In this document: in pieces, positions 6,621 to 39,901 of the stretch
Position numbering within the stretch: the first letter of the stretch is position 1
Layout: each line of letters opens with the position of its first letter
Source: Octopus sinensis
Taxonomy: Eukaryota
Assembly (NCBI RefSeq): GCF_006345805.1
Contig: NC_043013.1
Location: 30,876,001 to 30,940,000 of the forward strand
Length of the DNA: 64,000 nt
Direction of reading: 5' to 3'
Translations under genes and position numbers: made by a program
The notes under the pieces: model-generated
What the model was told of the DNA's origin: nothing
The model's database searches: none
Seen by the model: only the letters and a program-made list of their open reading frames with translations

Positions 6621-7131
6621 CATGTAGGAAAGATGATTGAGTTGACCGATTTCACACTTTAAAAAATAGATTTTCAAAACTAAAACATAAGGCTTTGTGT
6701 GGCATTTTTGTATTAAAAAGATTATAATTGTATTAAAATACAGTTATACAATATTTGATAATGATAAGAAAATGTTAAGAGGGGCTTTTTGTTTAAACAG
6801 TTTACATAAATGTCTTCAAGATAGGTAGGGAAATAAATTCATAATTATTTTAAGTTCCTCAAAAATCATGATTGTAAAGAAGCCTATATACAGAAAGAAT
6901 CATATTCAAGTATCTATACAGCATTTTAGGGAATGAACAATCTTTCCTTCCTTCATCTCCAGTGTATATATGTTTAAGGGATTGTCGCTATTTTTAGAAA
7001 TAATGTGGCAGGCTAATTGTTGGAGGAGAGCATTTTGGAATCAAAAGGATCATTTTGTGTCTGGGCTAGTCTGTCATGGTTCAGTGGCATTTGGAATGGT
7101 CTTAGATTTAAAGGTAGTTTGAGTGTGTACG

Positions 7132-20775: not shown

Positions 20776-20854
<79 letters not shown>

Positions 20855-20857
20855 ATA

Positions 20858-21363
20858 GCCTCTGTGCAGAATATAAGCTACTGGGAAAGACTCAAGAGAT
20901 TAAAACTCTATTCCTTGGAGCGTAGGCGAGAAAGATATGCCATAATATACATCTGGAAGATCCTGGAGGGACTTGTACCAAACTTTGGCATCGAGAGTTA
21001 CACAAATGCCAGAACAGGGCGCCACTGCGTGGTGCCTAGGACTCCAAATTTGCCATCAAGATGTAGGACAAGATACTGTGATAGCCTGGGCTTCCGAGGC
21101 CCACATCTCTTCAATATCCTCCCGAAGAACCTAAGAGACCTGCATGGGGTGGATGCAGATGTCTTTAAAATGAGACTGGATCTCTTCTTGTCAGGTATCC
21201 CAGATGAACCAACTTCACGGCAGGAGGTGCAGATGAGGGCAGCTGCATCGAACTCTCTCATGCACCAAATGGCAGTTGCTAAAAAGCATTTGTGAAGTAA
21301 AACCATGTAGCAACACCAAATGGCGGTGCCCCAGCATGGCCACAGCTCGTGAGCTGAAACTAG

Positions 21364-21397
<34 letters not shown>
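20858..21397 (+). mobile_element. 5'-truncated CR1-group LINE 3' end
   Basis: ORF 20864-21295 is nearly identical to the C-terminus of ORF 36627-39731 (YWERLKRLKLYSLERRRERY...). Same 3' UTR and (AATC)n tail. Confidence 0.95.
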
Positions 21398-21448
<51 letters not shown>

Positions 21449-25133: not shown

Positions 25134-26142
25134 CAGGGTCTTGCAGAGAAATTGAGGCAACTTTTGCGATGCATAAAACTGGTTATAAAACTAAAATAAT
25201 GGTTGTAGAAGATATAATTTTAACGTAACATTTATTACAACGAAAACATTTATCACTCTATATGGCTGCCCTTTTGGGAAATTATTGCCTCCATCCGAGA
25301 AGGCAAATTTTTCGCAGCTGCTGCAACATACGCTTTTCATTTTGTGTGTCACCCGCACGATTTCAGGTCTTCAACCTGTTGATATTCGACTGTGGTGAGG
25401 TATTGGTACTTGTTTGAAAAAAGTAACCAAGAAAGTTGAGATCTATACTGTTACTGGGCCAGATGCTGGCCCTCACAAAAAATGGCACCTTCTGTCTAAG
25501 TAAGGCCTCTGTTGTTTTTGACCCATGACATGGTGCAAAATCCTGGATAAGCACCACATTCTCAAGCCCAAATTTCTGCACCATCCAAAGTAACAGAGAG
25601 TTCTTAGGGATGTCCCGATACTCCTTTGTGCCGATCTTCAAGCTAGATTCAATAATGTTTGCATTCATAATATTTCAATGACTCGTCACGGATCCAAATA
25701 CCATCACAGAAGCAGGGTTCTTAGTCTCACACACAAGGGGAACGTCAGAATGTTGCATGCAACCACTCGAGAACTTGTGCGATTCACCTCAGCGTCCACA
25801 ATAAATCTCTTCTCGTCCCAAAACACTAGAGTTTTTTTCCTGCTTGATGTTTGATTGATGACAAGAGCTTTGGGAATCTCTCGTCTTTGATGGTAGTTAC
25901 GAGGTACTACATAACTAGTCATGCCAAAGTTCCTGTTCACAGCCCCTGGACACATTGGAAAGGGACAGATGGCATTTCTTTGCAAGAGTTGTCATGGATT
26001 GGCTTCAATCGAACGTTTGAGGCCAGCGACAAACTTTGGATTGCGCTTGGAACCACTTGGAGACTTGTGTCTGTTTCTATTAAGCTTTCCCTCTTCAAAT
26101 TATTTAAACACACTATAAACTTTTGCTTTTAGAATTTTCGTC
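25134..26142 (-). mobile_element. Tc1/mariner superfamily DD37D (maT-type) transposase remnant, one TIR retained
   Basis: TA|CAGGGT... TIR at 25134. Minus-strand ORFs give VFWDEKRFIVD and IQDFAPCHGSK...WPSNSIDLNFLGY, with 37 residues between the second D and the (mutated, G) third position. The 5' part is lost at the CR1 junction. Confidence 0.8.
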
Positions 26143-27070
26143 ACAAATAGTGAGTGGTGTTCCACAGGACACTGTCTTGGGACCACTACTTTTCATAGTG
26201 GACCTCTCAGTTATACTCTCAGCTGCCCGGATAGTCACCCTTGCAAGCTAAGCAGACGATGCGAAAGACTCGCAGAAAATACAAAACCCCAGCGATGCAC
26301 GCCTGGAGCAACTTGAAGATAGGCTGAGCACAATAATATGATATTTAGCACTGGAAAGGTCTAAGCCCTGCACTACCAGTGCCCAAAAGTGAATGAAATC
26401 TTTCCAGGGTACACTGGCCCAGGGGCGATTACAATCCTAAGTGCACATTAGAAGATTGTGACTAAGTGCAGACGGCTGGCTTGATGAATGGATCCTGAGG
26501 ACCTTTAGACCAGAGAGAGGGAAACCATGATGGTTCTCTGGAGAACATTCATCGCCAGCAGCTTGGAATACTGCTTCTATGGTCACCCCGGAGTGTAAAA
26601 TTAACAGCGGATCTTGAAGCAACCCAGTGGAGTTTCACAAATAAGATCGTCTCATTGCACAGCAAAAACTCTCCTCCCTGGAGCGAAGGTGTGAGAGATA
26701 TGCAGTACTAGACATCTGGAAGATCCAGGAAGGGATTCTGCACAGTGCCAGCGATCCCAACAATGCCGTCGGGCTTGAGGGCTAGTTACTGCAACAGCCT
26801 GGTTTTCAAGAGACCACATTATTTTTAATGTTCTCCCAAAGACACTGAGATACCAACAAAAAGTAGGTGTAGGTGTTTTCAGAACAAAACCGGATCTCTT
26901 CCTGTCGAGAATCCCAGATGAACCCCACTCGGAACAGGAAACGCAAATGACGGCAGCGACATCAAACGCCGTTCTTCATCAAATGCCATATATCAGGGAA
27001 GACTCTCGATAACAACAGTGTAGTTAAACGACGGTGTCCCAGCAAGGCCACAGCTTTCTGCTGAAACTTA
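26143..27070 (+). mobile_element. Old decayed CR1-group LINE 3' fragment
   Basis: QIVSGVPQDTVLGPLLF..., ADD motif with an adjacent stop codon; tail gacggtgtcccagcaaggccacagctttctgctgaaac. Confidence 0.8.
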
Positions 27071-27131: not shown

Positions 27132-27865
27132 GTCTTAAGTTCAAAGCTGTGGTCATTCTGGGGCACCACTATTACTTTGTGAATGATTCTACTGATTCTA
27201 CTTTCCTCATTCGGGTTTCCTGTCGCGAGGTAGGCTCGTCTGGGTCCCTTGACAGGGAAGAGATCCAGTTTTGTTTTAACGACACCTTTACCCGCACCAC
27301 TCAGGTCACTCATAAATTTTGGAAGGATATTGAAGAGTTATGGGCCTTTGGAATCCAAGCTGTTGCAGTATCTGGTCCTGTATTTTGATGGAGATACTGT
27401 GATGTTTGCCGCTATGCCGCGTTCTACTGTTTGTGTAATATTCAACGCTAAAGTTTGGTACAAAGCCTTCCAGGAAGGTTCAGATATATATCACTGCATA
27501 TCATTCACGCCTTCCTCCAAGGGAGAAGAGTTTTAACACTTTCAGTCTTTCCCAGTAGCTGATACGTTGCATTGAAACGATTTTCTTCGTTGCATTACAT
27601 CGAGTTCGGCCGTTAATTTTATATCATGTTGTGACCATAGTTGGGAGCAGTAGTCCAAGCTGCTGAGGGCGTATGCCCTCCAAAGGGCCATCATTGTCTC
27701 CTCTTCTCTCGTTTTGAAAGTTCAGAGGATTCATCCAGCCAGCCCTCCGCATTTTATAATCAAATTGGTAATATGTACCTGGAGCGATGCATCATTGCTC
27801 ATGTCAATGCTCAGGTTACTCACTGATTTTTATTCAGGAATTGCGAGCTCTCCTGGTAGCACACA
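27132..27865 (-). mobile_element. Old decayed CR1-group LINE 3' fragment, tail-to-tail with 26143-27070
   Basis: Minus strand reads ...SSLDYCSQLWS..., RTRYCNSLDSKGP, LFNILP..., and ends ggtgccccagaatgaccacagc. Confidence 0.8.
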
Positions 27866-29841: not shown

Positions 29842-29913
<72 letters not shown>

Positions 29914-29916
<3 letters not shown>

Positions 29917-31539
29917 AAGTATCATGTCGATGTCCGGCGAGGAGAGACATTCAGGCCAGTTTTGTTTGAGGATCTCTTTCTCAATTTGTTTCCAGTTTGC
30001 CTTATTGAAGTTCAAGCTGGAAAGATTCTGAGGGTTTCTTGTAGGCTGCATGTCCGTGCTCTCTTTTGGCCCGTACATGGTCAGCTCTACCATGTTGTGA
30101 TCCGAGAGTAGTGTCGGTGTCACTTTCACATTATGGATGAGATCCATATTATTTGTGAAGCAGAGATCCAGTGTGTTACCCGCTCTGGTTGGTTGGAGTA
30201 TTACTTGCTCCATGTACAGGGTGTTGGTGAGGTTCAGGAGGGACCTCGCCTGTCCTCGTTCACATCTTGTCATTCCTGGGAGAGAAAGGCCCTCGGGCCA
30301 TCTGACATTCGGTAGATTGAAATCTCCCATGAGAAGTACACTTATGTGTTGTTCTAATGTGGTTAGAACTTCTTCTATTTTTAAAAGGCAGTCCTCAAAC
30401 TTGCCCATATGACTTGGGGCATCTGGAGGGCGATATGTAGCACACACAACTACATCAAGTTGCCTTATGTGTACAATTAGTGTGTCACACACCGAGTTTG
30501 TGTATGACAAAAAGACCTGGGGTGTGAGGTCCCCACGGATGTACATAGCAACTCCTCCATGACTTCTTTCTTTCCTGTCGGTCCGTAGTACAACATACTG
30601 TGGTATGTGTAATTCCGCATCTGCTATGTCCGGTTTCAGATGCGTTTCTGTGAGTGCTATGCATAAGGCTTGATTGCATGCGACAAAGTCGTATGCTGTT
30701 GCCGGTGGTGTCCACCCTGGGTCCATCTGCTGTGGCGGTCTTGTGAACCGTGGGCAGTTCCATCTGCGAGCCTGAGCCTGATGGAGCCAGGTTAGCTGCT
30801 GTACAATCTTTTGTGCCATGCACAAAAAAGATTCCTGCTCAGCAGCTGCCCTCTCAACAACACGTTGGTGGTTTGTGGTACGCACCACATCTGCGTACCT
30901 CCGCTTTGGGGCCGGTGATGCGTGGTCCATCCCATTTCCTTTCGGTGGTTGGTTTCTGTGGCAGGGTCCCGGATGTGCAAAGCGGCAGCCTGCACCTTCC
31001 TCTCCATGCCGGCAGGCACCTTTCAGGTAGAACCTACATACCCGTGTGCGCTGCTTGTTTCCATCCTTTTTGGCATATGGACAGTTAGGTTTGCCTCTAT
31101 CCCTGGCTGCCTTGCCCTTGGCTTTGTCTGAGTTTTAGCTTCAGTTTTTCCTCTTTTTTTGGCCTCTTCATCTCCATGTCCATGGCTTTTGGTGCCGGTA
31201 GGAGCATCCGTACCTGGGTTCACCTCCCGGGCAGGCCTCTCGCTGGAGTTTTCTTCCTGGGCGTCCACCAGGTGGGGGTGACCATCCTCATCTGCGCCCG
31301 CGTCTCCATCCTTGCCATCTTTACTTTGTTCGCGTTTTTCGCTGTTAAAAATGGCATCCAGTGTGTTTATGTGCGATCTGACAAGTGCGTATGAGCGTAC
31401 GAACTCTTGCCTCTTCCGCTCTATTTGTGCTGACGTCCTTTTGATCCTTTGTTCCCCAGTGCTGCCGCAATTATGCCACTTGGACCCTCTCCGTCAGCGC
31501 ATTGCCATCCTCGCAGGAACCACGCCAGCCCACCACGCC
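29914..31539 (-). mobile_element. Inverted 5' segment (ORF1 plus endonuclease) of a CR1-group LINE
   Basis: The reverse complement aligns to about 35890-37612 of the full-length copy: Myb-like RGGLAWFLRGWQC...IAAALGNKG, CCCH CRFYLKGACRHGEEGAGCRFAH, and APE TETHL, GDFNLP, SDHN. Confidence 0.92.
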
Positions 31540-33700
31540 TAATGCAAGCCATATGCTACAAATGTGTCCCAGAGAGAAAGGCCACTGTACACAAGAACAA
31601 AATCCCCAGAGAGAGAAAAATTTTAATGAGACGGCGCACAAAAATCTCAAATCGCCTAAACAAACAAATTGAAAGCAGTGAGAAGTCCCGCCTGAAAATA
31701 AAACTGTTGGAATTTGAAAATTGTCTGCAACTCTCCCATGAGAAGGAAAGAGCAGACAAAGAAGCCTGGGCTATAGACAACATAAAAACTAACCCCAGAG
31801 CTTTCTACAGGTATGCCAAGAAACAGCTACGGTGCACTGTAGGATAGGGCCACTCCTTGAAAAGGATGGCACACTCACAGGAAAACCAATGAGGGTAAGT
31901 GAAATACTGAATGAACAATTCAAGAGTGTTTTCACTCCACCCCTTGGGCATTTCCAAATCAGCAATCCAACTGACTTTTTTACCACTGCAGATATAGAAT
32001 CAGAGGCGGCGACGTTAAATTACATCGATATAAAGGAAGACGATGTAATAAAGGCTATAGATGAAATGAAAATAGACTCAGCTATTGGCCCCGATGGATT
32101 CCCGGCAATCCTCCTAAAAGTATGTAAGAGAGTCTTAGCAAGACCACTGCAGTTCCTCTTTCAGAGCTTCCTTGCAGCTGGCAAACTTCCAAGAAAACTG
32201 AAGAAGGTAAAATATGCCCTATTCATAAAGGAGGTAGCAGAGCGGAGGCCAAGAACTACAGACCTATCTCTCTGACCTCACACATCAGCAAGGTCATGGA
32301 ACGAATAGTCAGAAGGAAACTAATCACCTTCCTTGAAGAAAATGACTTGCTGCCTGACACCCAACATGGTTTCCGACCAGGAAGAAGCTGCTTAACTCAG
32401 CTCCTGCAGCACTATGACTGGGTGCTGAAACAACTGCTCAACCACTCAAATGTGGAAGTCATATATCTCGACTTCGCAAAGGCCTTCGATAAAGTCGATC
32501 ATGGAATGATATGTCACAAACTGCGTGATCTTGGCATAGTTGGAAAACTAGGAGAATGGCTTCACGACTTTCTAAAGAATAGAAGTCAGGTGGTAGTAGC
32601 CAATGGGGCCACTTCCATTAGCACGCAAATAGTGAGCGGTGTTCCACAGGGCACTGTTTTGGGACCACTACTGTTCATAATGGCCCTCTCAGACATGCCC
32701 TCAGCCACGCGGAGAGCCACGATCACAAGTTATGCAGATGATACAAAAGTTTCACAGGCAATACAGAACCCTGAAGACACTAGGCACCTGCAATATGAGC
32801 TGGACGAAATATACAAGTGGGCTGAAAAGAATAGCATGCAGTTCAATGCTGAAAAGTGTCAAGCTTTATACTATCAGCATGCAAAACTGAATGCAATATC
32901 CAAGGAATACACTGGACCCGGAGGGATTGCAATCCCAGAGGCACAATCAGTGCGTGACCTGGGTATTCACATGAGTGATGACGCGACCTTTCATGTACAT
33001 GTTGCTAAACTGACAGTGAAATGCAGACGGCTGGCTGGATGGATTCTTAGAACCTTTAGAACAAGAGAACAAGAAACCATGATGGTCCTCTGGAAGACAC
33101 TTGTCCTAAGTCACTTTGACTATTGCTCTCAGCTATGGTCACCATCCAGTGTCAAGTTGATCACAGAACTTGAGGCGATCCAACGAAGCTACACGAAGAA
33201 GATAGCCTCTATGCAGAATGTAAGCTACTGGGAAAGACTCAAGAGATTAAAATTATATTCCCTGGAGCGTAGGCGGGAAAGATATGCCATAATATACATC
33301 TGGAAGATCCTGGAGGGAAGTGTCCTGAACTTTGGCATCGAGAGTTACGCAAACGCCAGAACTGGGCGCCACTGCGTGGTGCCTAGGACAAGATTCTGTG
33401 ATAGCCTGGGCTTCCGAGGCCCACAGCTCTTCAATATCCTCCCGATGAACCTGAGAGACCTGCATGGGGTGGATACAGATGTCTTTAAAATGGAGCTGGA
33501 TCTATTCCTGTCAGGTGTCCCAGATGAACCAACTTCACGGCAGGAGGGGCAGATGAGGGCAGCTGCATCGAACTCTCTCATGCACCAAATAGCAGTTGCT
33601 AGAAAGCCTCCATGAAGTGAAACCAAGTAGCAACACCAAATGGCGGTGCCCCAGCATGGCCACAGCTCGTAAGCTGAAACTGGAATCAATCAATCAATCA
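31540..33700 (+). mobile_element. Direct 3' segment (RT region, frameshifted) of the same CR1 insertion
   Basis: Starts taatgcaagccatatgc (equivalent to 37627 of the full-length copy). Has QHGF, DFAKAFD, GVPQG and YADD motifs, 1-nt deletions, a 27-nt in-frame deletion and an (AATC)n tail. Confidence 0.95.
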
Positions 33701-34814
33701 TATAATAGAGAGGTGTCTATTCCAATGAGTATATTCATCTACGCTTTATTATTCACGGACATTAAATATCGTTTATCACAGGATATTATTATATTATTAA
33801 TCTCAAAATACGTGCGTACAAAATTGTCCCAGTTGTTTACACTTAAAACGTTTCTACTTTTATCTAATATTCATTTTCATAAACATGTCAAAATCGATTG
33901 AGCGTTATATTTTACAGCATTCCTTATCTTTAACTTCGATATTTAGGATTATAATATTTGTTTTATAATGGAGATCTACACACGAAATCATGTTGGAAAC
34001 TATATTTGTATATTCTGAGTTCACATAAATTTAATGTATAATTTTATCCTATATGTAAATATAAAGGCAGTCTTGTGTTTTCAAAATTAATATTTAATAT
34101 TTCTCTTGCCTCAGAACTGCGTGCGTGAATGTTGCTCAGGATTACGTAAATCTTATCTGCAATGAGCACTCAGAAACATATCAATATATATTTGGAAATT
34201 CAGTATTTACATCAATAGATACATATTCGATGATATTTTTCTTCAAACACACAGGCACGCACCTACACATACATGCACACATAGACACACACGTGTATAT
34301 ATATGTATATCACGGTGACGGTGATATACATATATACATATAAGATATACATATATACATATAAGAAAGACGTGATTGCCTTTGCTCTGTGAAAAAGTTT
34401 GCATAGAACGGCGAAATAACCCACTGTAGTTGCAAAACGTAAAACTCTAAGTCACAGAGATCACTACAACACTTTGGTTAAAAATATTTTAAAAAATATA
34501 TATATAAATATATACATATACACAGTCATTTTCATTTTCGCCGAAACGCACATGGTGCAAAAATAACTGAATCAAGTTATCTCCTGCAAGAAAGAAAAAA
34601 GAAGCATCTCTCCTGAAAAAAATCCCGTAAACCAAAAAAAATAATCCAGACCACATTGTTGGATTAAGTATCAATTTCATCTATTTCATATTTTATTTAA
34701 TATTTTATTTATTATTCTATTTTATCTTTCACTTAGGCCCACATCTTAGTTAAAGTTGCGATCGTCATTTTGTTTTGTTTACATTATCAATAACTGTTCT
34801 CGATATAATAATTT

Positions 34815-35815
34815 TCCAGATACTCTATCTTCTAATTAGCCTTAAGATTAAATTAAATAACGTTTAATATTGATACCGTCAAATTAGCCTTAGGATTAAA
34901 TTAAATAACGTTTAATATTGTTTAATATTGTTAATAATTATTGTTAATTAGCCTTAAGATTAAATTAAATAACGTTTAATATTGTCTTAATATTGTTAAT
35001 AATTTTTCAGATACTCTATCTTCTAATTAGCCTTAAGATTAAATTAAATAACGTTTAATATTAATAATGTCTAATTAGCCTTAAGATTAAATAAATAACG
35101 TTTAATATTGTTTAATATTGTTAATAATTATTGTTGATTAGCCTTAAGATTAAATTAAATAACGTTTAATATTGTTTAATATTGTTAATAATTCTTCAGA
35201 TACTCTATCTTCTAATTAGCCTTAAGATTAAATTAAATAACGTTTAATATTACCCACACTCTAATATAATATTAACATTGCTAATATATTTTCAGATACT
35301 CTATCTCCTGATTAGCCTTAAGATTAAATAACGTTTTTATCCACACTCTAATATAATATTAATATTGCTAATATATTTTCAGATACTCTATCTTCTAATT
35401 AGCCTTAAGATTAAATTAAATAACGTTTAATATTAATAATGTCTAATTAGCCTTAAGATTAAATTAATAACGGTTAATATTGCTTAATATTGTATATATA
35501 ATTTTTCAGATACTCTGTCTTCTAATTAGCCTTAAGATTAAATTAAATAACGTTTAATATTACCCACACTCTAATATAATATTAATATTGCTAATATATT
35601 TTCAGATACTCTATCTCCTAATTAGCCTTAAGATTAAACAACGTTTTTATCCACACTCTAATATAATATTAATATTGCTAATACATTTTCAGATACTCTA
35701 TCCCCTAATTAGCCTTAAGATTAAATAACGTTTTTACCCAAATAACGTTTTTACACAAACTTTAATATTGTTAATATTTCTTTTTCAAGTACTCTATCTT
35801 CTAATTAGCCTTAAT
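34815..35815 (+). repeat. Variable-unit minisatellite array (14 cores), probable LINE 5' UTR
   Basis: Core aattagccttaagattaaa...taacgttt counted 14 times, often preceded by cagatactctatcttct. Ends about 60 bp before the ORF1 ATG. Confidence 0.85.
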
Positions 35816-35875: not shown

Positions 35876-36259
35876 ATGTCCAGAGCATGGAGACGTGACG
35901 AGCTGGATTTATTTGTACGAGCATGGGAGTGCGCCGGCGGAGATAGCCCTAGGGAGGTGATTGCGGCTGCGCTGAAGAGCAGAGGCTACAAGAGGACAGC
36001 GGCTCAGATGGAGCGAAAGAGACAGGAATTCGTGCGCTCATATGCGCTTGTACGGTCGCACATTGGCGCACTTGATGCCATCTTTGAGAACGAGCGGAGC
36101 AAAGATAGCAAGAATGGAGACGATGAAAGAAGTCACCCCCACCTGGTGGACGCCCGGGAGGAGGTTTTGAATGAGAAACCTGCCCGGGAAGTGAACCCAG
36201 GTGCAAGTTCTCCAACCGGCAGCAAGGGCCATGGAGACGGAGAACCCGTGAAGAGGTAG
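35876..36259 (+). CDS. LINE ORF1 N-terminal part: Myb/SANT-like (trihelix-type) domain plus acidic linker
   Basis: AWRRDELDLFVRAW...VIAAALKSRGYKRTAAQMERKRQEFVRSY fits by eye the W..E...L...W...IA..L..RGY.RT..Q...K...Y pattern. Conserved in the second copy. Confidence 0.65.
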   Translation: MSRAWRRDELDLFVRAWECAGGDSPREVIAAALKSRGYKRTAAQMERKRQEFVRSYALVRSHIGALDAIFENERSKDSKNGDDERSHPHLVDAREEVLNEKPAREVNPGASSPTGSKGHGDGEPVKR

Positions 36260-36783
36260 AGGGAGGAAGAAGAACTAAAAGAAGGACTGGAAGAGCTAAA
36301 GGAAAAGAAAAAGCTCAAGCAGGACCAAAGAGTGAAACAACCAGAAATAGAAGTGGAACCGCAAAGGATGGAACCAAACAGCGCACACGGGTGTGTATGT
36401 TCTACCTGAGAGGTTCCTGCTGGCATGGAAAGGAAGGTGCAGGCTGCCGCTTTGCACATCGGGGACCCTGCCACAGAGACACGAGGCAGATGGACAAACC
36501 ATCAACACAAAGAAAAGGGATGGACCACGCACCACCTGCCCCAAAGCGGAGGTACGCAGATGTTGTGCGCGCCACAAACAGCCAACATGATGTCGAAAGA
36601 GCAGCTGCTGAGCAACAATCTTTTTTGTGCATGGCACAAAAGATTGTACAGCAGCTGACCTGGCTTCATCAAACCCAAGCCCGCAGGTGGGACTACCCAC
36701 TATATACCAGACCACCACAGCAAACAGACACAGGATGGACACCGCCGGCAACAACGTACACCTCACCTCGATACTCCTACTGA
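36175..36783 (+). CDS. LINE ORF1 C-terminal part (-1 frame): basic linker, CCCH zinc finger, helical C-terminus
   Basis: The frame is open from 36175. CMFYLRGSCWHGKEGAGCRFAH is C-x7-C-x8-C-x3-H. Synonymous substitutions versus the second copy (gct aaa gga aaa / gcc aag ggc aag). Confidence 0.75.
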   Translation, partial: ETCPGSEPRCKFSNRQQGPWRRRTREEVEGGRRTKRRTGRAKGKEKAQAGPKSETTRNRSGTAKDGTKQRTRVCMFYLRGSCWHGKEGAGCRFAHRGPCHRDTRQMDKPSTQRKGMDHAPPAPKRRYADVVRATNSQHDVERAAAEQQSFLCMAQKIVQQLTWLHQTQARRWDYPLYTRPPQQTDTGWTPPATTYTSPRYSY

Positions 36784-39731
36784 ACATCAGAGGACTGCAA
36801 ACACTCAGTAACAGGACAAAGATCCCGTTCCTGAGAGACTTTGTTGCATGCAATCAAGCCTTATGCATAGCACTTACAGAAACGCACCTGAAACCGGACA
36901 TAGCAGATGCGGAGTTACACATACCACAGTATGCTGTACTACGGACCGACAGGAAAGAAAGGAGTCATGGAGGTGTTGCTATGTACATCCGTGAGGACCT
37001 CACACCCCAGGTCCTCTTGTCATACTCAAACTCGGTGTGTGACACACTAATTGTACATATCAGGCAACTTGATGTAGTTGTGTGTGCTACATATCGCCCT
37101 CCAGATGCCCCAAGACATGTGGGCAAGTTTGAAGACTGCCTTATAAAAATAGAAGAAATTCTAACCACATTAGAACAACACATAGGTGTGCTTCTTATGG
37201 GAGACTTCAATCTGCCCAATGTCAGATGGCCCGAGGGCCTTTCTCTCCCAGGAATGACAAGATGTGAACGAGGACAGGCGAGGTCCCTCCTGAACCTCAT
37301 CAACACCCTGTACATGGAGCAGGTAATACTCCAACCAACCAGGGCAGGAAACACACTGGATCTCTGCTTCACAAATGACATGGATCTCATCCATAATGTG
37401 AAAGTGACACCGACACTACTCTCGGATCACAACATGATAGAGCTGACCATGTACGGGCCAAAAGAGAGCACGGACATGCAGCTTACAAGAAACCCTCAAA
37501 ATCTTTCCAGCTTGAACTACCATAAGGCAAACTGGAAACAAATTGAGAAAGAGATCCTCAAACAAAACTGGCCTAAATGTCTCTCCTCGCCAGACATCGA
37601 CGTGAAACTTCAACAATTCATGTCTGTAATGCAAGCCATATGCTACAAATGTGTCCCAGAGAGAAAGGCCACTGTACACAAGAACAAAATCCCCAGAGAG
37701 AGGAAAATTTTAATGAGACGGCGTACGAAATTTTCAAATCGCCTAAACAAACAGATTGAAAGCAGTGAAAAGTCCCGCCTAAAAATGAAACTGTTGGAAA
37801 TCGAAAAATGTCTGCAACTCTCCCATGAAAAAGAAAGAGCAGACAGAGAAGCCTGGGCTATAGAAAACATAAAATCTAACCCCAGAGCTTTCTACAGGTA
37901 TGCCAAAGAAACAGCTACAGTGCACTGTAGAATAGGGCCACTCCTCGAAAAGGATGGCACACTTACAGGAAAACCAATGAGGGTAAGTGAAATACTGAAT
38001 GAGCAATTCAAGAGTGTTTTCACTCCACCCCTTGGGCATCTCCAAATCACCAATCCAACTGACTTTTTTAACACTGCAGATATAAAATCAGAGGCGGCGA
38101 CGATAGATTACATCGATATAAAGGAAGAAGATGTAACCAAGGCTATAGATGAAATGAAAACAGACTCAGCTACTGGCCCCGATGGATTCCCGGCAATCCT
38201 CCTAAAAGCATGTAAGAGAGTCCTAGCAAGACCACTGCAGTTCCTCTTTCAGAGCTTCCTTGCAGCTGGCAAACTTCCAGGAAAACTGAAGGAAGGTAAA
38301 ATATGCCCCATTCATAAAGGAGGTAGCAGAGCGGAAGCCAAGAACTATAGACCTATCTCTCTGACCTCACACATCAGCAAGGTCATGGAACGAATAGTCA
38401 GAAGGAAGCTGATCACCTTCCTTGAAGAGAATGACTTGCTGCCCGACACCCAACATGGTTTCCGACCAGGGAGAAGCTGTTTAACTCAGCTCCTACAACA
38501 CTATGACTGGGTGCTGAAACGGCTGCTCAACCACTCAAATGTGGAAGTGATATATCTCGACTTTGCAAAGGCCTTTGATAAAGTCGATCATGGAATGATA
38601 TGTCACAAACTGCGTGATCTCAACATAGTTGGAAAACTGGGAGAATGGCTTCATGACTTTCTGAAGGATAGATGTCAGGTGGTAGTAGCCAATGGGGCCA
38701 CCTCCATTAACACACAAATAGTGAGCGGTGTTCCGCAGGGCACTGTTCTGGGACCACTACTGTTCATAATGGCCCTCTCAGACATGCCCTCAGCCACGCA
38801 GAGAGCCACGATCACAAGTTATGCAGATGATACAAAAGTTTCACAGGCAATACAGAACCCTGAGGACACTAAACACCTGCAATGTGAGCTGGACGAAATA
38901 TACAAGTGGGCTGAAAAGAATAGCATGCAGTTCAATGCTGGAAAGTTTCAAGCTTTATACTATCAGCATGCAAAACTGAATGCAATACCCAATGAATACA
39001 CTGGACCCGGAGGGATTGCAATCCCAGAGGCACAATCAGTGCGTGACCTGGGTATTCACATGAGTGATGACGCGACCTTTCATGTACATGTTGCTAAACT
39101 GACACTGAAATGTAGACGGCTGGCTGGATGGATTCTTAGAACCTTTAGAACAAGAGAACAAGAAACCATGATGGTCCTCTGGAAGACACTTGTCCTAAGC
39201 CACTTTGACTATTGCTCTCAGCTATGGTCACCATCCAGTGTCAAGTTGATCACAGAACTTGAGGCGACCCAACGAAGCTACACAAAGAAGATAGCCTCTA
39301 TGCAGAATGTAAGCTACTGGGAAAGACTCAAGAGATTAAAATTATATTCCCTGGAGCGTAGGCGGGAAAGATATGCCATAATATACATCTGGAAGATCCT
39401 GGAGGGAAGTGTCCTGAACTTTGGCATCGAGAGTTACGCAAATGCCAGAACTGGGGGCCACTGCGTGGTGCCTAGGACTCCAAACCTGCCATCAAGATGT
39501 AGGACAAGATTCTGTGATAGCCTGGGCTTCCGAGGCCCACAGCTCTTCAATATCCTCCCGAAGAACCTGAGAGACCTGCATGGGGTGGATACAGATGTCT
39601 TTAAAATGAAGCTGGATCTCTTCCTGTCAGGTGTCCCAGATGAACCAACTTCACGGCAGGAGGGGCAGATGAGGGCAGCTGCATCGAACTCTCTCATGCA
39701 CCAAATAGCAGTTGCTAGAAAGCCTCCATGA
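36627..39731 (+). CDS. LINE ORF2: apurinic-type endonuclease plus reverse transcriptase, uninterrupted (likely start ATG 36735)
   Basis: APE motifs LNIRGL, TETHL, GDFNLP, DLCF, SDHN. RT motifs YRPISL, QHGF, YLDFAKAFDKV, SGVPQGTVLGP, YADD, DLGI. CR1-type C-terminus LERRRERY. Confidence 0.95.
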   Translation: MHGTKDCTAADLASSNPSPQVGLPTIYQTTTANRHRMDTAGNNVHLTSILLLNIRGLQTLSNRTKIPFLRDFVACNQALCIALTETHLKPDIADAELHIPQYAVLRTDRKERSHGGVAMYIREDLTPQVLLSYSNSVCDTLIVHIRQLDVVVCATYRPPDAPRHVGKFEDCLIKIEEILTTLEQHIGVLLMGDFNLPNVRWPEGLSLPGMTRCERGQARSLLNLINTLYMEQVILQPTRAGNTLDLCFTNDMDLIHNVKVTPTLLSDHNMIELTMYGPKESTDMQLTRNPQNLSSLNYHKANWKQIEKEILKQNWPKCLSSPDIDVKLQQFMSVMQAICYKCVPERKATVHKNKIPRERKILMRRRTKFSNRLNKQIESSEKSRLKMKLLEIEKCLQLSHEKERADREAWAIENIKSNPRAFYRYAKETATVHCRIGPLLEKDGTLTGKPMRVSEILNEQFKSVFTPPLGHLQITNPTDFFNTADIKSEAATIDYIDIKEEDVTKAIDEMKTDSATGPDGFPAILLKACKRVLARPLQFLFQSFLAAGKLPGKLKEGKICPIHKGGSRAEAKNYRPISLTSHISKVMERIVRRKLITFLEENDLLPDTQHGFRPGRSCLTQLLQHYDWVLKRLLNHSNVEVIYLDFAKAFDKVDHGMICHKLRDLNIVGKLGEWLHDFLKDRCQVVVANGATSINTQIVSGVPQGTVLGPLLFIMALSDMPSATQRATITSYADDTKVSQAIQNPEDTKHLQCELDEIYKWAEKNSMQFNAGKFQALYYQHAKLNAIPNEYTGPGGIAIPEAQSVRDLGIHMSDDATFHVHVAKLTLKCRRLAGWILRTFRTREQETMMVLWKTLVLSHFDYCSQLWSPSSVKLITELEATQRSYTKKIASMQNVSYWERLKRLKLYSLERRRERYAIIYIWKILEGSVLNFGIESYANARTGGHCVVPRTPNLPSRCRTRFCDSLGFRGPQLFNILPKNLRDLHGVDTDVFKMKLDLFLSGVPDEPTSRQEGQMRAAASNSLMHQIAVARKPP

Positions 39732-39850
39732 AGTGAAACCAAGTAGCAACACCAAATGGCGGTGCCCCAGCATGGCCACAGCTCATAAGCTGAAACTAGA
39801 ATCAATCAATCAATCAATCAATCAATCATATTAAATATATATATATAAAC

Positions 39851-39881
<31 letters not shown>

Positions 39882-39901
39882 ATATACGTATATATATATA
39901 T

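What the first reader, a model, noticed from the sequence alone, without database searches (positions are those of the whole stretch)
35876..36783. CR1-group LINE whose ORF1 combines a Myb/SANT-trihelix-like domain with a CCCH zinc finger
Seen: the ORF1 N-terminus reads W.RDEL.LFVRAW...IAAALKSRGYKRTAAQMERKRQEF...Y, followed by a C-x7-C-x8-C-x3-H finger. Both are conserved at the protein level in the diverged copy at 29914-31539. Known: described CR1/L2/Jockey ORF1 types carry RRM plus CCHC, PHD, esterase or Tnp22-like domains. Trihelix Myb-like domains are typical of PIF/Harbinger accessory proteins and transcription factors. Inference: this may be an undescribed ORF1 architecture pairing a DNA-binding module with an RNA-binding one. 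It could contribute to target choice, since the three young copies here abut TA-rich tracts, or to autoregulation through the repeat leader.
Basis: partly seen in the sequence, partly recalled or inferred. Interest (0 to 1): 0.8.

Follow-up and report, generated by a model that had tools for sequence, protein, structure and literature searches.

The report
Octopod LINE ORF1: Myb-like plus CCCH
A jumping gene (LINE) of octopuses carries a first protein built from a Myb/SANT-like three-helix domain and one RNA-type CCCH zinc finger, a domain combination I found in none of the published surveys of LINE proteins that I could search; both copies in this window are broken by small indels.

Summary
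Window 35876-36783 holds the first gene (ORF1) of a young APE+RT LINE with an intact 1034-aa ORF2. ORF1 has four parts: an N-terminal ~80-aa helical domain, a basic purine-rich linker, one C-x7-C-x8-C-x3-H finger, and a conserved C-terminal block.

Both window copies need one frame change in the linker, so neither encodes a whole ORF1. The same architecture is one uninterrupted ORF directly upstream of ORF2 in Argonauta hians (291 aa) and in a metagenome contig (371 aa). Octopus vulgaris proteins annotated only as hypothetical carry it too.

Copy 1 and copy 2 show strong purifying selection on both modules.

Myb/SANT-like assignment:
- Myb_DNA-bind_4 is the only recurring Pfam hit (7 of 18 members), always below threshold.
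- hhalign gives 90.5% against repeats of a protein that passes that threshold.
- An AlphaFold model (pLDDT 88) has Myb/SANT domains as its top Foldseek matches, at non-significant E-values.

The CCCH call is firm (MBNL1, 3.8e-6). The finger is shared with PHD-type ORF1s of related LINEs.

DNA binding, target choice and CR1-versus-L2 placement are untested. Verdict: a new variant of a known kind, of moderate interest.

The parts
34883..35815 (+). Tandem-repeat leader (units of about 64-87 bp) directly upstream of ORF1; presumed 5' UTR or promoter of copy 1
   Evidence: Tandem Repeats Finder. That it belongs to the element is inferred: copy 2 is truncated at ORF1. The Argonauta element also has two 112-bp units just before its ORF1 ATG. 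Repeated 5' subunits are reported for CR1-group elements (PMC13343379).
35876..36112 (+). ORF1 residues 1-79: Myb/SANT-like helical domain (helices 7-19, 25-35, 42-60, plus a fourth helix 63-79); start MSR.W is conserved
   Evidence: pI about 10.5, with a basic helix 3.
36113..36393 (+). Purine-rich K/R/E linker carrying the lesion. A single frame change anywhere in 36175-36256 gives one ORF from 35876 to 36783. There is a 5-nt out-of-phase indel relative to copy 2 at 36244-36248. The TAG at 36257-36259 is read only in the old frame.
36394..36459 (+). CCCH zinc finger CMFYLRGSCWHGKEGAGCRFAH (C-x7-C-x8-C-x3-H)
   Evidence: coordinates; Torus 8.3e-6, zf-CCCH 0.013, both below threshold; profile against PDB: MBNL1 3.8e-6, CPSF30 1e-3.
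36553..36669 (+). Conserved C-terminal block YADVVR...AAAEQQSFLCMAQKIVQQLTWLH, followed by a P/Q-rich tail; ORF1 stop at 36781-36783
   Evidence: Conserved in Argonauta, L007 and P0127. No family match was found.
36627..39731 (+). ORF2, 1034 aa and intact: APE endonuclease plus reverse transcriptase. It lies in the -1 frame relative to the ORF1 end and overlaps it. First in-frame ATG at 36735.
   Evidence: Pfam RVT_1 2.5e-30 and Exo_endo_phos_2 6.1e-12.
39758..39827 (+). Conserved 3' UTR box GGCGGTGCCCCAGCATGGCCACAGC..GCTGAAAC (two small hairpins), then an (AATC)7 tail at 39800-39827
30691..31539 (-). ORF1 of copy 2. It is 5'-truncated just after the start codon, has a 1-nt deletion in the Myb-like part, and needs one frame change in the linker (allowed range 31134-31028; a 2-nt indel sits at 31130-31129).
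29914..30690 (-). Copy 2, inverted 5' part of ORF2 (95% identical to copy 1 36837-37613). A 77-nt deletion spans the ORF1/ORF2 junction.
31540..33700 (+). Copy 2, 3' part in forward orientation (95% identical to copy 1 37627-39816), ending in (AATC)4
20855..21407 (+). Copy 3: 5'-truncated 3' end (93% identical), (AATC)n tail, (TA)n on both sides

Best explanation
This is the ORF1 of an octopod LINE of the Jockey superfamily (CR1/L2 group). Its ORF2 encodes APE plus RT, and the element ends in a microsatellite tail.

The functional form of ORF1 is one protein of about 300 aa with five parts:
1. an N-terminal, basic Myb/SANT-like three-helix domain;
2. a disordered K/R-rich linker of about 100 aa;
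3. one CCCH zinc finger of the MBNL/CPSF30 kind;
4. a conserved C-terminal helical block;
5. a P/Q-rich tail that overlaps ORF2, which lies in the -1 frame.

Shown: the architecture, its conservation across octopods, purifying selection on both modules, the fold class of the N-terminal domain, and the CCCH identity.

Inferred: the finger and basic linker bind the element's own RNA to form the ribonucleoprotein particle, as ORF1 proteins of other LINEs do. The Myb/SANT-like domain contacts DNA or chromatin at the integration site. It sits where related LINEs carry a PHD finger, so it would be an exchanged N-terminal tethering cassette.

In this window both ORF1 copies are pseudogenes. Each is broken by its own small indel in the mutation-prone linker. 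ORF2 of copy 1 is intact.
For: Architecture and conservation:
- An intact 291-aa ORF1 with both modules lies directly upstream of, and overlaps, a 58%-identical ORF2 in Argonauta hians.
- An intact 371-aa ORF1 followed by the APE start is in L016.
- Octopus vulgaris proteins P0141 and P0125 carry both modules in one ORF.
- An exhaustive HMMER search with residues 1-80 finds only 21 proteins in 1.84 billion. All those whose source or context I checked are octopod or LINE-linked.

Selection: pN 0.10 against pS 0.80 in the helix-3 block, and dN/dS 0.26 from the finger to the C-terminus.

Myb/SANT-like assignment:
- Myb_DNA-bind_4 is the top Pfam hit for the window (0.0019; 0.00047 for the trimmed domain), Argonauta (0.0015), P0126 and P0122. 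It is matched by 7 of 18 members, and no other family recurs.
- hhalign gives 90.5%, E 1.4e-6, against the repeats of P0138, a protein that passes the Pfam threshold (32.2 > 27).
- AlphaFold2 on 21 sequences gives pLDDT 87.9.
- Foldseek top matches include RAD MYB (2cjj, probability 0.94, TM 0.61/0.75, rmsd 2.0), PHR1 MYB, CDC5L, the GT-1 trihelix and the DMAP1 SANT domain.
- The domain has pI about 10.5.

CCCH assignment:
- A profile of the finger hits MBNL1 at 3.8e-6 and CPSF30 at about 1e-3.
- The finger is homologous to finger 1 of the PHD-plus-CCCH ORF1s of LINEs with 41-43% identical ORF2 (hhalign 97.4%, E 1e-11).

Independent lesions:
- The ranges in which one frame change mends each copy do not overlap, and each contains an out-of-phase indel.
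- Other family members show +1 shifts (L014, L015), an in-frame stop (L013) or no lesion.
Against: - No single sequence reaches the Myb_DNA-bind_4 gathering score (19-21 bits against 27).
- All Foldseek E-values exceed 0.1.
- A sequence profile of the domain finds no solved Myb or SANT structure; the best hits are ribosomal protein S8 at 0.07.
- The middle spacing of the finger (8 residues) is longer than the usual 4-6, and the Pfam CCCH models are all missed by a few bits.
- Nothing here tests binding to DNA or RNA.
- Both window copies need the same net -1 change, which an inherited or programmed frameshift would also explain.
- The CR1-versus-L2 position was not tested.
Confidence: 0.72

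Rival explanations
1. The break between the two modules is functional. The Myb-like part and the finger part would be joined by programmed -1 ribosomal frameshifting, or by stop read-through, giving a short Myb-only protein and a longer fusion, as in retroviral gag-pol.
For: - Both window copies need the same net -1 change, although their ORF1 DNA is 27% diverged and selected on both sides of the break.
- Many database relatives are 137-166-aa ORFs that stop in the linker.
- L013 has a TAA at the codon aligned with the window's TAG, after ...K-R.
- The finger frame has no conserved ATG of its own.
Against: - Intact single ORFs exist in L001, L016, P0141 and P0125.
- L014 and L015 need +1, not -1.
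- I saw no conserved slippery heptamer. The only A-rich candidate in copy 1 (GAAAAAG near 36308) is deleted in copy 2.
- The ranges that allow a single change differ between the copies, and each holds an out-of-phase indel.
- L013 is otherwise riddled with stops.
Confidence: 0.08
2. The N-terminal module has the Myb/SANT fold but does not bind DNA. It would act as a SANT-like protein or histone-tail contact, as an RNA-binding module, or as an assembly domain of the ORF1 particle.
For: - The fold matches include SANT domains of DMAP1 and SMRT as well as DNA-binding Myb domains.
- Relatives carry a PHD finger, a histone reader, in the same position.
- ORF1 proteins of LINEs are primarily RNA binders (established knowledge; PMC4120745).
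Against: The domain and its third helix are strongly basic (pI 10.5 and 10.8). From my own knowledge, that is typical of DNA-binding Myb domains and not of SANT domains. This is indirect evidence only.
Confidence: 0.15
3. The resemblance to Myb/SANT is fortuitous. The N-terminus would be a lineage-specific helical bundle with no relation to known DNA-binding domains.
For: Every direct match is below the formal threshold: Pfam 19-21 bits against 27, and Foldseek E 0.6 or more. The PDB sequence profile search finds no Myb.
Against: Four independent lines point to the same fold class and to no other:
- recurrent Pfam hits in 7 of 18 members;
- a phmmer hit at 5.6e-5 to a repeat protein that passes the Pfam threshold;
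- hhalign at 90.5%;
- Myb/SANT domains dominating the top Foldseek ranks for a pLDDT-88 model.
Confidence: 0.05

Closest known systems
PHD-type (type III) ORF1 of CR1- and L2-lineage LINEs (Kapitonov and Jurka 2003; Metcalfe and Casane 2014, PMC4120745)
   Same: - Same kind of element: APE+RT ORF2 and a non-poly(A) tail.
- The ORF2s of the PHD-type elements fetched here are 41-43% identical to the window's.
- ORF1 has an N-terminal small reader or binder domain followed by a homologous C-x7-C-x8-C-x3-H finger (hhalign 97.4%).
   Different: - The octopod ORF1 has a Myb/SANT-like domain instead of the PHD finger.
- It has one CCCH finger instead of three.
- It has its own C-terminal block, for which I detected no homology.
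- The published survey lists PHD but mentions no CCCH.
N-terminal zinc-finger plus Myb DNA-binding region of R2 elements (PMC6895275)
   Same: A non-LTR retrotransposon protein that pairs a zinc finger with a Myb-type domain at its N-terminus. In R2 these bind target DNA downstream of the insertion site.
   Different: - R2 has a single ORF and a restriction-like endonuclease.
- It is strictly site-specific.
- From my own knowledge, its fingers are of the C2H2 DNA-binding type and its Myb is of the c-Myb type.
- Here the modules sit in a separate ORF1 of an APE-type LINE, and the finger is of the RNA-binding CCCH type.
Myb/SANT-like (trihelix, Pfam Myb_DNA-bind_4) accessory proteins of PIF/Harbinger DNA transposons, and GT-1-type transcription factors
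   Same: Same Pfam family as the only recurring match. The GT-1 trihelix is among the fold matches. A transposon-encoded DNA-binding helper is the functional analogy.
   Different: - Below the family threshold.
- No Trp at the third conserved position (F52 instead).
- Fused to a CCCH finger and encoded by a retrotransposon.
- The Harbinger comparison rests on my own knowledge and was not tested here.
CCCH fingers of MBNL1, CPSF30 and RBM22
   Same: Cys3His ligand pattern, the aromatic/basic motif C.F/Y..G.C and C.F.H.P, and profile E-values of 3.8e-6 to 7e-2.
   Different: Two extra residues in the middle loop (x8 against x6 in MBNL1). A single finger, whereas tandem fingers are usual for RNA recognition.

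Membership tests
Myb/SANT-like DNA-binding domain (Pfam PF13837, Myb_DNA-bind_4) | The sequence scores above the family's gathering threshold (27 bits) | tested here: not met
   Window 19-21 bits, Argonauta 19.3, P0126 16.5, P0122 15.6. It is nevertheless the only family matched by several members: 7 of 18, best E 9e-5.
Myb/SANT-like DNA-binding domain (Pfam PF13837, Myb_DNA-bind_4) | Profile-level similarity to accepted members | tested here: met
   hhalign of the family alignment A7 against the five repeats of P0138 (which passes the threshold, 32.2 bits) gives 90.5%, E 1.4e-6 over 58 columns. phmmer links the window to P0138 at 5.6e-5 in a library of 1.84 billion proteins.
Myb/SANT-like DNA-binding domain (Pfam PF13837, Myb_DNA-bind_4) | Three-helix Myb/SANT fold | tested here: inconclusive
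   The model has pLDDT 87.9 with helices at 7-19, 25-35 and 42-60. Top Foldseek matches are Myb/SANT domains (2cjj TM 0.61/0.75, rmsd 2.0; GT-1; DMAP1 SANT), but every E-value is 0.6 or more.
Myb/SANT-like DNA-binding domain (Pfam PF13837, Myb_DNA-bind_4) | Binds DNA | not testable with these tools
   Indirect evidence only: pI 10.5 and a basic third helix.
CCCH (C3H1) zinc finger | Cys-Cys-Cys-His ligands with conserved spacing | tested here: met
   C-x7-C-x8-C-x3-H is invariant in 9 sequences from 3 ORF1 types. The middle spacing of 8 is longer than the canonical 4-6.
CCCH (C3H1) zinc finger | Significant similarity to accepted CCCH fingers | tested here: met
   Profile against PDB: MBNL1 3.8e-6, CPSF30 1.3e-3, MEX-5, RBM22, TTP. 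Single-sequence Pfam hits are below threshold: Torus 26.8 against 29, zf-CCCH 15.8 against 20.5.
CR1 group / Jockey superfamily of LINEs | ORF2 with an N-terminal APE endonuclease and an RT, and no RNase H | tested here: met
   Pfam Exo_endo_phos_2, Exo_endo_phos and RVT_1 only.
CR1 group / Jockey superfamily of LINEs | 3' end without poly(A): a short tandem-repeat tail after a conserved 3' UTR | tested here: met
   (AATC)n in three window copies, other short repeats in L001, L007 and L013, and a conserved hairpin box.
CR1 group / Jockey superfamily of LINEs | The RT clusters with CR1/L2-group references in a phylogeny | not tested
   No Repbase or Dfam reference set was available. The only indirect support is that relatives with 41-43% identical ORF2 carry PHD-type ORF1s, a type reported from the CR1 and L2 lineages.
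Described ORF1 types I-IV (RRM+CCHC, Transposase_22, PHD, esterase) | Presence of an RRM, CCHC knuckle, Tnp22, PHD or esterase domain | tested here: not met
   None appears in Pfam scans at E up to 10 for the window pieces or up to 1 for Argonauta, P0127 and P0141. By that scheme this ORF1 is type V, unclassified.

The most novel reading that the evidence does not exclude
The N-terminal module of ORF1 in this LINE group is an exchangeable DNA or chromatin tethering cassette. Octopod elements replaced the PHD histone reader of their relatives with a Myb/SANT-like DNA binder. That domain would help to steer the particle to (TA)n microsatellites, where all three window copies sit. This would be ORF1-mediated target choice in an APE-type LINE.
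Probability: 0.12. Interest if true: 0.65.

Novelty: new variant of a known kind. Interest (0 to 1): 0.45.

Why it matters
ORF1 proteins of LINEs outside L1 are poorly understood, and their domain make-up is known to be modular. This family adds a combination I did not find described: a Myb/SANT-like domain with an RNA-type CCCH finger.

It also shows that a CCCH finger is a shared core of a wider group of PHD-type ORF1s, where published surveys do not mention it.

A putative DNA binder sits exactly where relatives have a histone reader. Swapping or deleting that module in a retrotransposition assay is therefore a concrete way to ask whether ORF1 takes part in chromatin or target engagement.

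The window also shows a CR1-like LINE with an intact ORF2 in an octopod. Only RTE and Dong elements were reported as full-length in the octopus LINE study I read (PMC9115989).

Tried and rejected
- Word-indexed protein search with the joined ORF1 found nothing. The low-complexity linker probably swamped the word index.
- The same search with the three-sequence domain alignment found one 98-aa fragment, P0121. Its contigs hold a decayed Myb-like piece without finger or ORF2.
- An exact look-up of the 127-aa window ORF found nothing on record.
- Scans of metagenome and viral contigs with the ORF1 alignment gave one unrelated multi-CCCH protein and nothing else.
- The first AlphaFold run, on 4 sequences, was too weak to use (pLDDT 67).
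- PDB sequence searches with the domain profile gave only chance-level hits: S8 and DUF2559.
- Homology of the C-terminal block to PHD-type ORF1s was not detected.
- Kapitonov and Jurka 2003 and Khazina and Weichenrieder 2009 are not held in the library. I could not check whether the CCCH fingers next to PHD are mentioned there.
- No reference RT set was available for a phylogeny. The supplement of PMC4120745 holds names only.
- I considered and set aside a programmed frameshift; see the rival explanations.
- I rejected the idea that the N-terminal domain is a host exon captured by one copy. It is found with the finger and ORF2 in at least four diverged lineages, and it is under selection.

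Full report
**What is in the window**

The window is AT-rich (35% G+C) and full of microsatellites. The closest named relative of the element's ORF2 is a protein of the octopod Argonauta hians.

Copy 1 of the element has these parts:
- a tandem-repeat leader at 34883-35815;
- ORF1 at 35876-36783;
- an intact 1034-aa ORF2 at 36627-39731 with APE and RT domains (Pfam RVT_1 2.5e-30);
- a conserved 3' UTR box;
- an (AATC)7 tail at 39800-39827.

Two more copies are present. Copy 3 (20855-21407) is a 3' fragment.

Copy 2 is a 5'-inverted insertion:
- 31539 to 29914 on the minus strand matches copy 1 35893-37613;
- 31540-33700 on the plus strand matches copy 1 37627-39816.

The ORF2 parts of copies 1 and 2 are 95% identical. 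The ORF1 parts are only 73% identical.

**Checking the observation**

ORF1 is not a single open frame. The N-terminal frame stops at a TAG at 36257. The finger frame is one base back (-1) and is open from 36175 to the stop at 36783.

Copy 2 carries the same two modules. Between the copies, the helix-3 block has 27 differences, split 5/2/20 by codon position (pN 0.10, pS 0.80). The block from the finger to the C-terminus has dN/dS 0.26. Both modules therefore evolved under purifying selection over a long divergence. This is not chance.

**Is the two-module ORF1 real?**

Yes.
- In Argonauta hians (locus L001) a 291-aa uninterrupted ORF reads MSRNWLKDEMRLLVEAW...ALKKEGYIRNISQVKRKMSDILRSY..., then a linker, then CRYYIRGKCRHTQNGTQCRFAH, then YADAVK...EQINFLKVAQEMVTHLTWMH. 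It overlaps the start of an ORF2 that is 58% identical to the window's.
- An exhaustive HMMER search of 1.84 billion representative proteins with residues 1-80 found 21 proteins.
- Among them, P0127 (371 aa) has the full architecture in one ORF and is followed directly by the APE start on its contig.
- P0141 and P0125 have both modules in one ORF. They are Octopus vulgaris proteins annotated only as hypothetical or "NA".
- Other hits are 137-166-aa ORFs that end in the linker.

**The frame break**

Each window copy can be made continuous by one frame change, but the allowed ranges do not overlap:
- copy 1: 36175-36256;
- copy 2: 31134-31028, which corresponds to about 36284-36404 in copy 1.

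Each range contains an out-of-phase indel in the pairwise alignment: 5 nt at 36244-36248 in copy 1, and 2 nt at 31130-31129 in copy 2.

Elsewhere the linker shows +1 shifts (L014, L015), an in-frame TAA (L013) or no lesion (L001, L016). I saw no conserved slippery site.

I conclude that the purine-rich linker is a mutational hot spot and that the two window copies decayed independently. A programmed frameshift stays possible at low probability (0.08).

**The N-terminal domain**

- Pfam gives Myb_DNA-bind_4 as the top hit for the window piece (E 0.0019; 0.00047 when trimmed), for Argonauta (0.0015), for P0126 (0.011) and for P0122 (0.022).
- Of 18 family members, 7 match it at E up to 0.1, and no other family recurs.
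- None reaches the gathering score of 27 bits.
- One phmmer hit, P0138, is an 1114-aa protein with five repeats of W.RDE..LLLRAW...R...KR..L...Y.FI.DFN. It passes the Pfam threshold (32.2 bits).
- hhalign of the family alignment against those repeats gives 90.5%, E 1.4e-6.
- AlphaFold2 with a 21-sequence alignment gives pLDDT 87.9 and helices at 7-19, 25-35, 42-60 and 63-79.
- Foldseek against the PDB finds no significant match. The top ranks are nevertheless mostly Myb/SANT domains: rice PHR2, RAD MYB (2cjj, probability 0.94, TM 0.61/0.75, rmsd 2.0 over 63 columns), PHR1, CDC5L, the GT-1 trihelix, RTBP1, the SMRT and DMAP1 SANT domains, and ZZZ3.
- A sequence profile search of the PDB finds no Myb.
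- The domain is basic, with pI about 10.5, and helix 3 has pI 10.8.

Taken together, I regard the Myb/SANT-like assignment as well supported at the level of fold class. Formal family membership is not met. DNA binding is an inference.

**The finger**

C-x7-C-x8-C-x3-H is invariant across the family. A profile of the finger hits MBNL1 (3.8e-6), CPSF30 (about 1e-3), Tma46, MEX-5, RBM22 and TTP. All of these are RNA-binding CCCH fingers (their RNA-binding role is from my own knowledge).

The finger is not unique to the octopod family. LINEs whose ORF2 is 41-43% identical (L003, L004, L005) have an ORF1 made of a PHD finger plus three CCCH fingers. Their first finger has the same spacing and is homologous (BLASTP 4e-8; hhalign 97.4%, E 1e-11). 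The C-terminal block of the octopod ORF1 has no detectable counterpart there.

**How it most likely works**

By analogy with other LINE ORF1 proteins (established knowledge; PMC4120745), the finger and the basic linker would bind the element's RNA and form the particle that carries ORF2p.

The Myb/SANT-like domain occupies the place of the PHD finger of relatives. The simplest reading is an exchanged N-terminal module that contacts DNA or chromatin.

The three window copies sit in (TA)n tracts. All three 3' junctions read (AATC)n|ATAT, against a background of 3.3% of positions. Copy 3 has (TA)n on both sides. The endonuclease alone could explain this preference. Nothing links it to ORF1.

**Comparison with what is known**

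- The survey of Jockey-superfamily ORF1s lists RRM, CCHC, Tnp22, PHD, esterase, coiled coil and a zinc finger/leucine zipper. It has no occurrence of "CCCH" or "Myb" (PMC4120745).
- A 2026 survey of vertebrate CR1-group elements reports esterase ORF1s as the only identifiable subtype in the CR1 and L2 lineages it recovered, and also does not mention these domains (PMC13343379).
- The L1 survey does not mention them either.
- Full-text searches for CCCH or Myb_DNA-bind together with ORF1 found nothing relevant.
- R2 elements pair N-terminal zinc fingers with a Myb domain that binds target DNA (PMC6895275). That is a different element type with, from my own knowledge, a different finger type.
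- The octopus LINE study reports only RTE and Dong elements as full-length (PMC9115989).
- Repbase and Dfam could not be searched.

**Verdict**

The architectural interpretation is supported. The functional ideas are untested. The element class is consistent with the CR1 group but was not placed by phylogeny. This is a new variant of a known kind, of moderate interest.

Noticed in passing
window 29914-33700: Copy 2 is a 5'-inverted insertion. Its first 1.6 kb is reverse-complemented and abuts the forward 3' part, with 13 nt missing at the junction (copy 1 positions 37613/37627). L1 twin priming produces this pattern (my own knowledge). I do not know of it being described for CR1-like elements.
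   Followed up: partly
window 39800-39900, 33690-33710, 21380-21420, 20800-20857, 29864-29913: All three copies end in (AATC)n followed directly by ATAT. Copy 3 has (TA)n on both sides, and copy 2 has (TA)25 at its 5' side. ATAT starts at only 3.3% of window positions. The Argonauta copy lies between (AC)28 and a (CA)n run. This suggests insertion into microsatellites.
   Followed up: partly
window 39758-39796, 33642-33680, 21322-21360; L001 8393-8432; L007 3451-3490; L013 9856-9894; L002 3168-3206: A nearly invariant 3' UTR box, GGCGGTGCCCCAGCATGGCCACAGC-N6-9-GCTGAAAC, is shared by elements whose ORF2s are only 58-74% identical. It folds into two small hairpins just before the tail. It is a likely recognition site for the reverse transcriptase. 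The box is mostly invariant, so there is little covariation evidence.
   Followed up: partly
window 36627-36783; L001 5314-5404; L016 1178-1190; L013 about 6785-6920: ORF2 lies in the -1 frame relative to the end of ORF1 and overlaps it in all four informative elements. In Argonauta, ORF1's TGA overlaps an ORF2-frame ATG (ATGA). This hints at termination-reinitiation or frameshifting for ORF2 translation.
   Followed up: no
window 35893-36759 against 31539-30691, compared with 36837-39816 against copy 2: Divergence between copies 1 and 2 falls stepwise along the element. The Myb block has saturated synonymous sites, the finger-to-C-terminus block has dS about 0.4, and ORF2 differs by 5%. This implies recombination that swapped 5' modules between subfamilies.
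   Followed up: partly
window 34883-35815; L001 4280-4510: Both the window element and the Argonauta element have tandem repeats immediately upstream of the ORF1 ATG: units of 64-87 bp over about 1 kb in the window, and two 112-bp units in Argonauta. The repeat sequences are unrelated. This is reminiscent of the monomer promoters of mouse L1 (my own knowledge).
   Followed up: partly
P0138 (Logan contig, 1114 aa): A protein of unknown organism has five tandem Myb_DNA-bind_4-like repeats, each followed by a DWFSL motif, plus acidic low-complexity spacers. It is the only non-LINE relative of the ORF1 domain found.
   Followed up: no
window 26142-26733 and 27218-27857: Older, 66-78% identical fragments of the RT region of the same or a related LINE family lie in both orientations.
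   Followed up: no
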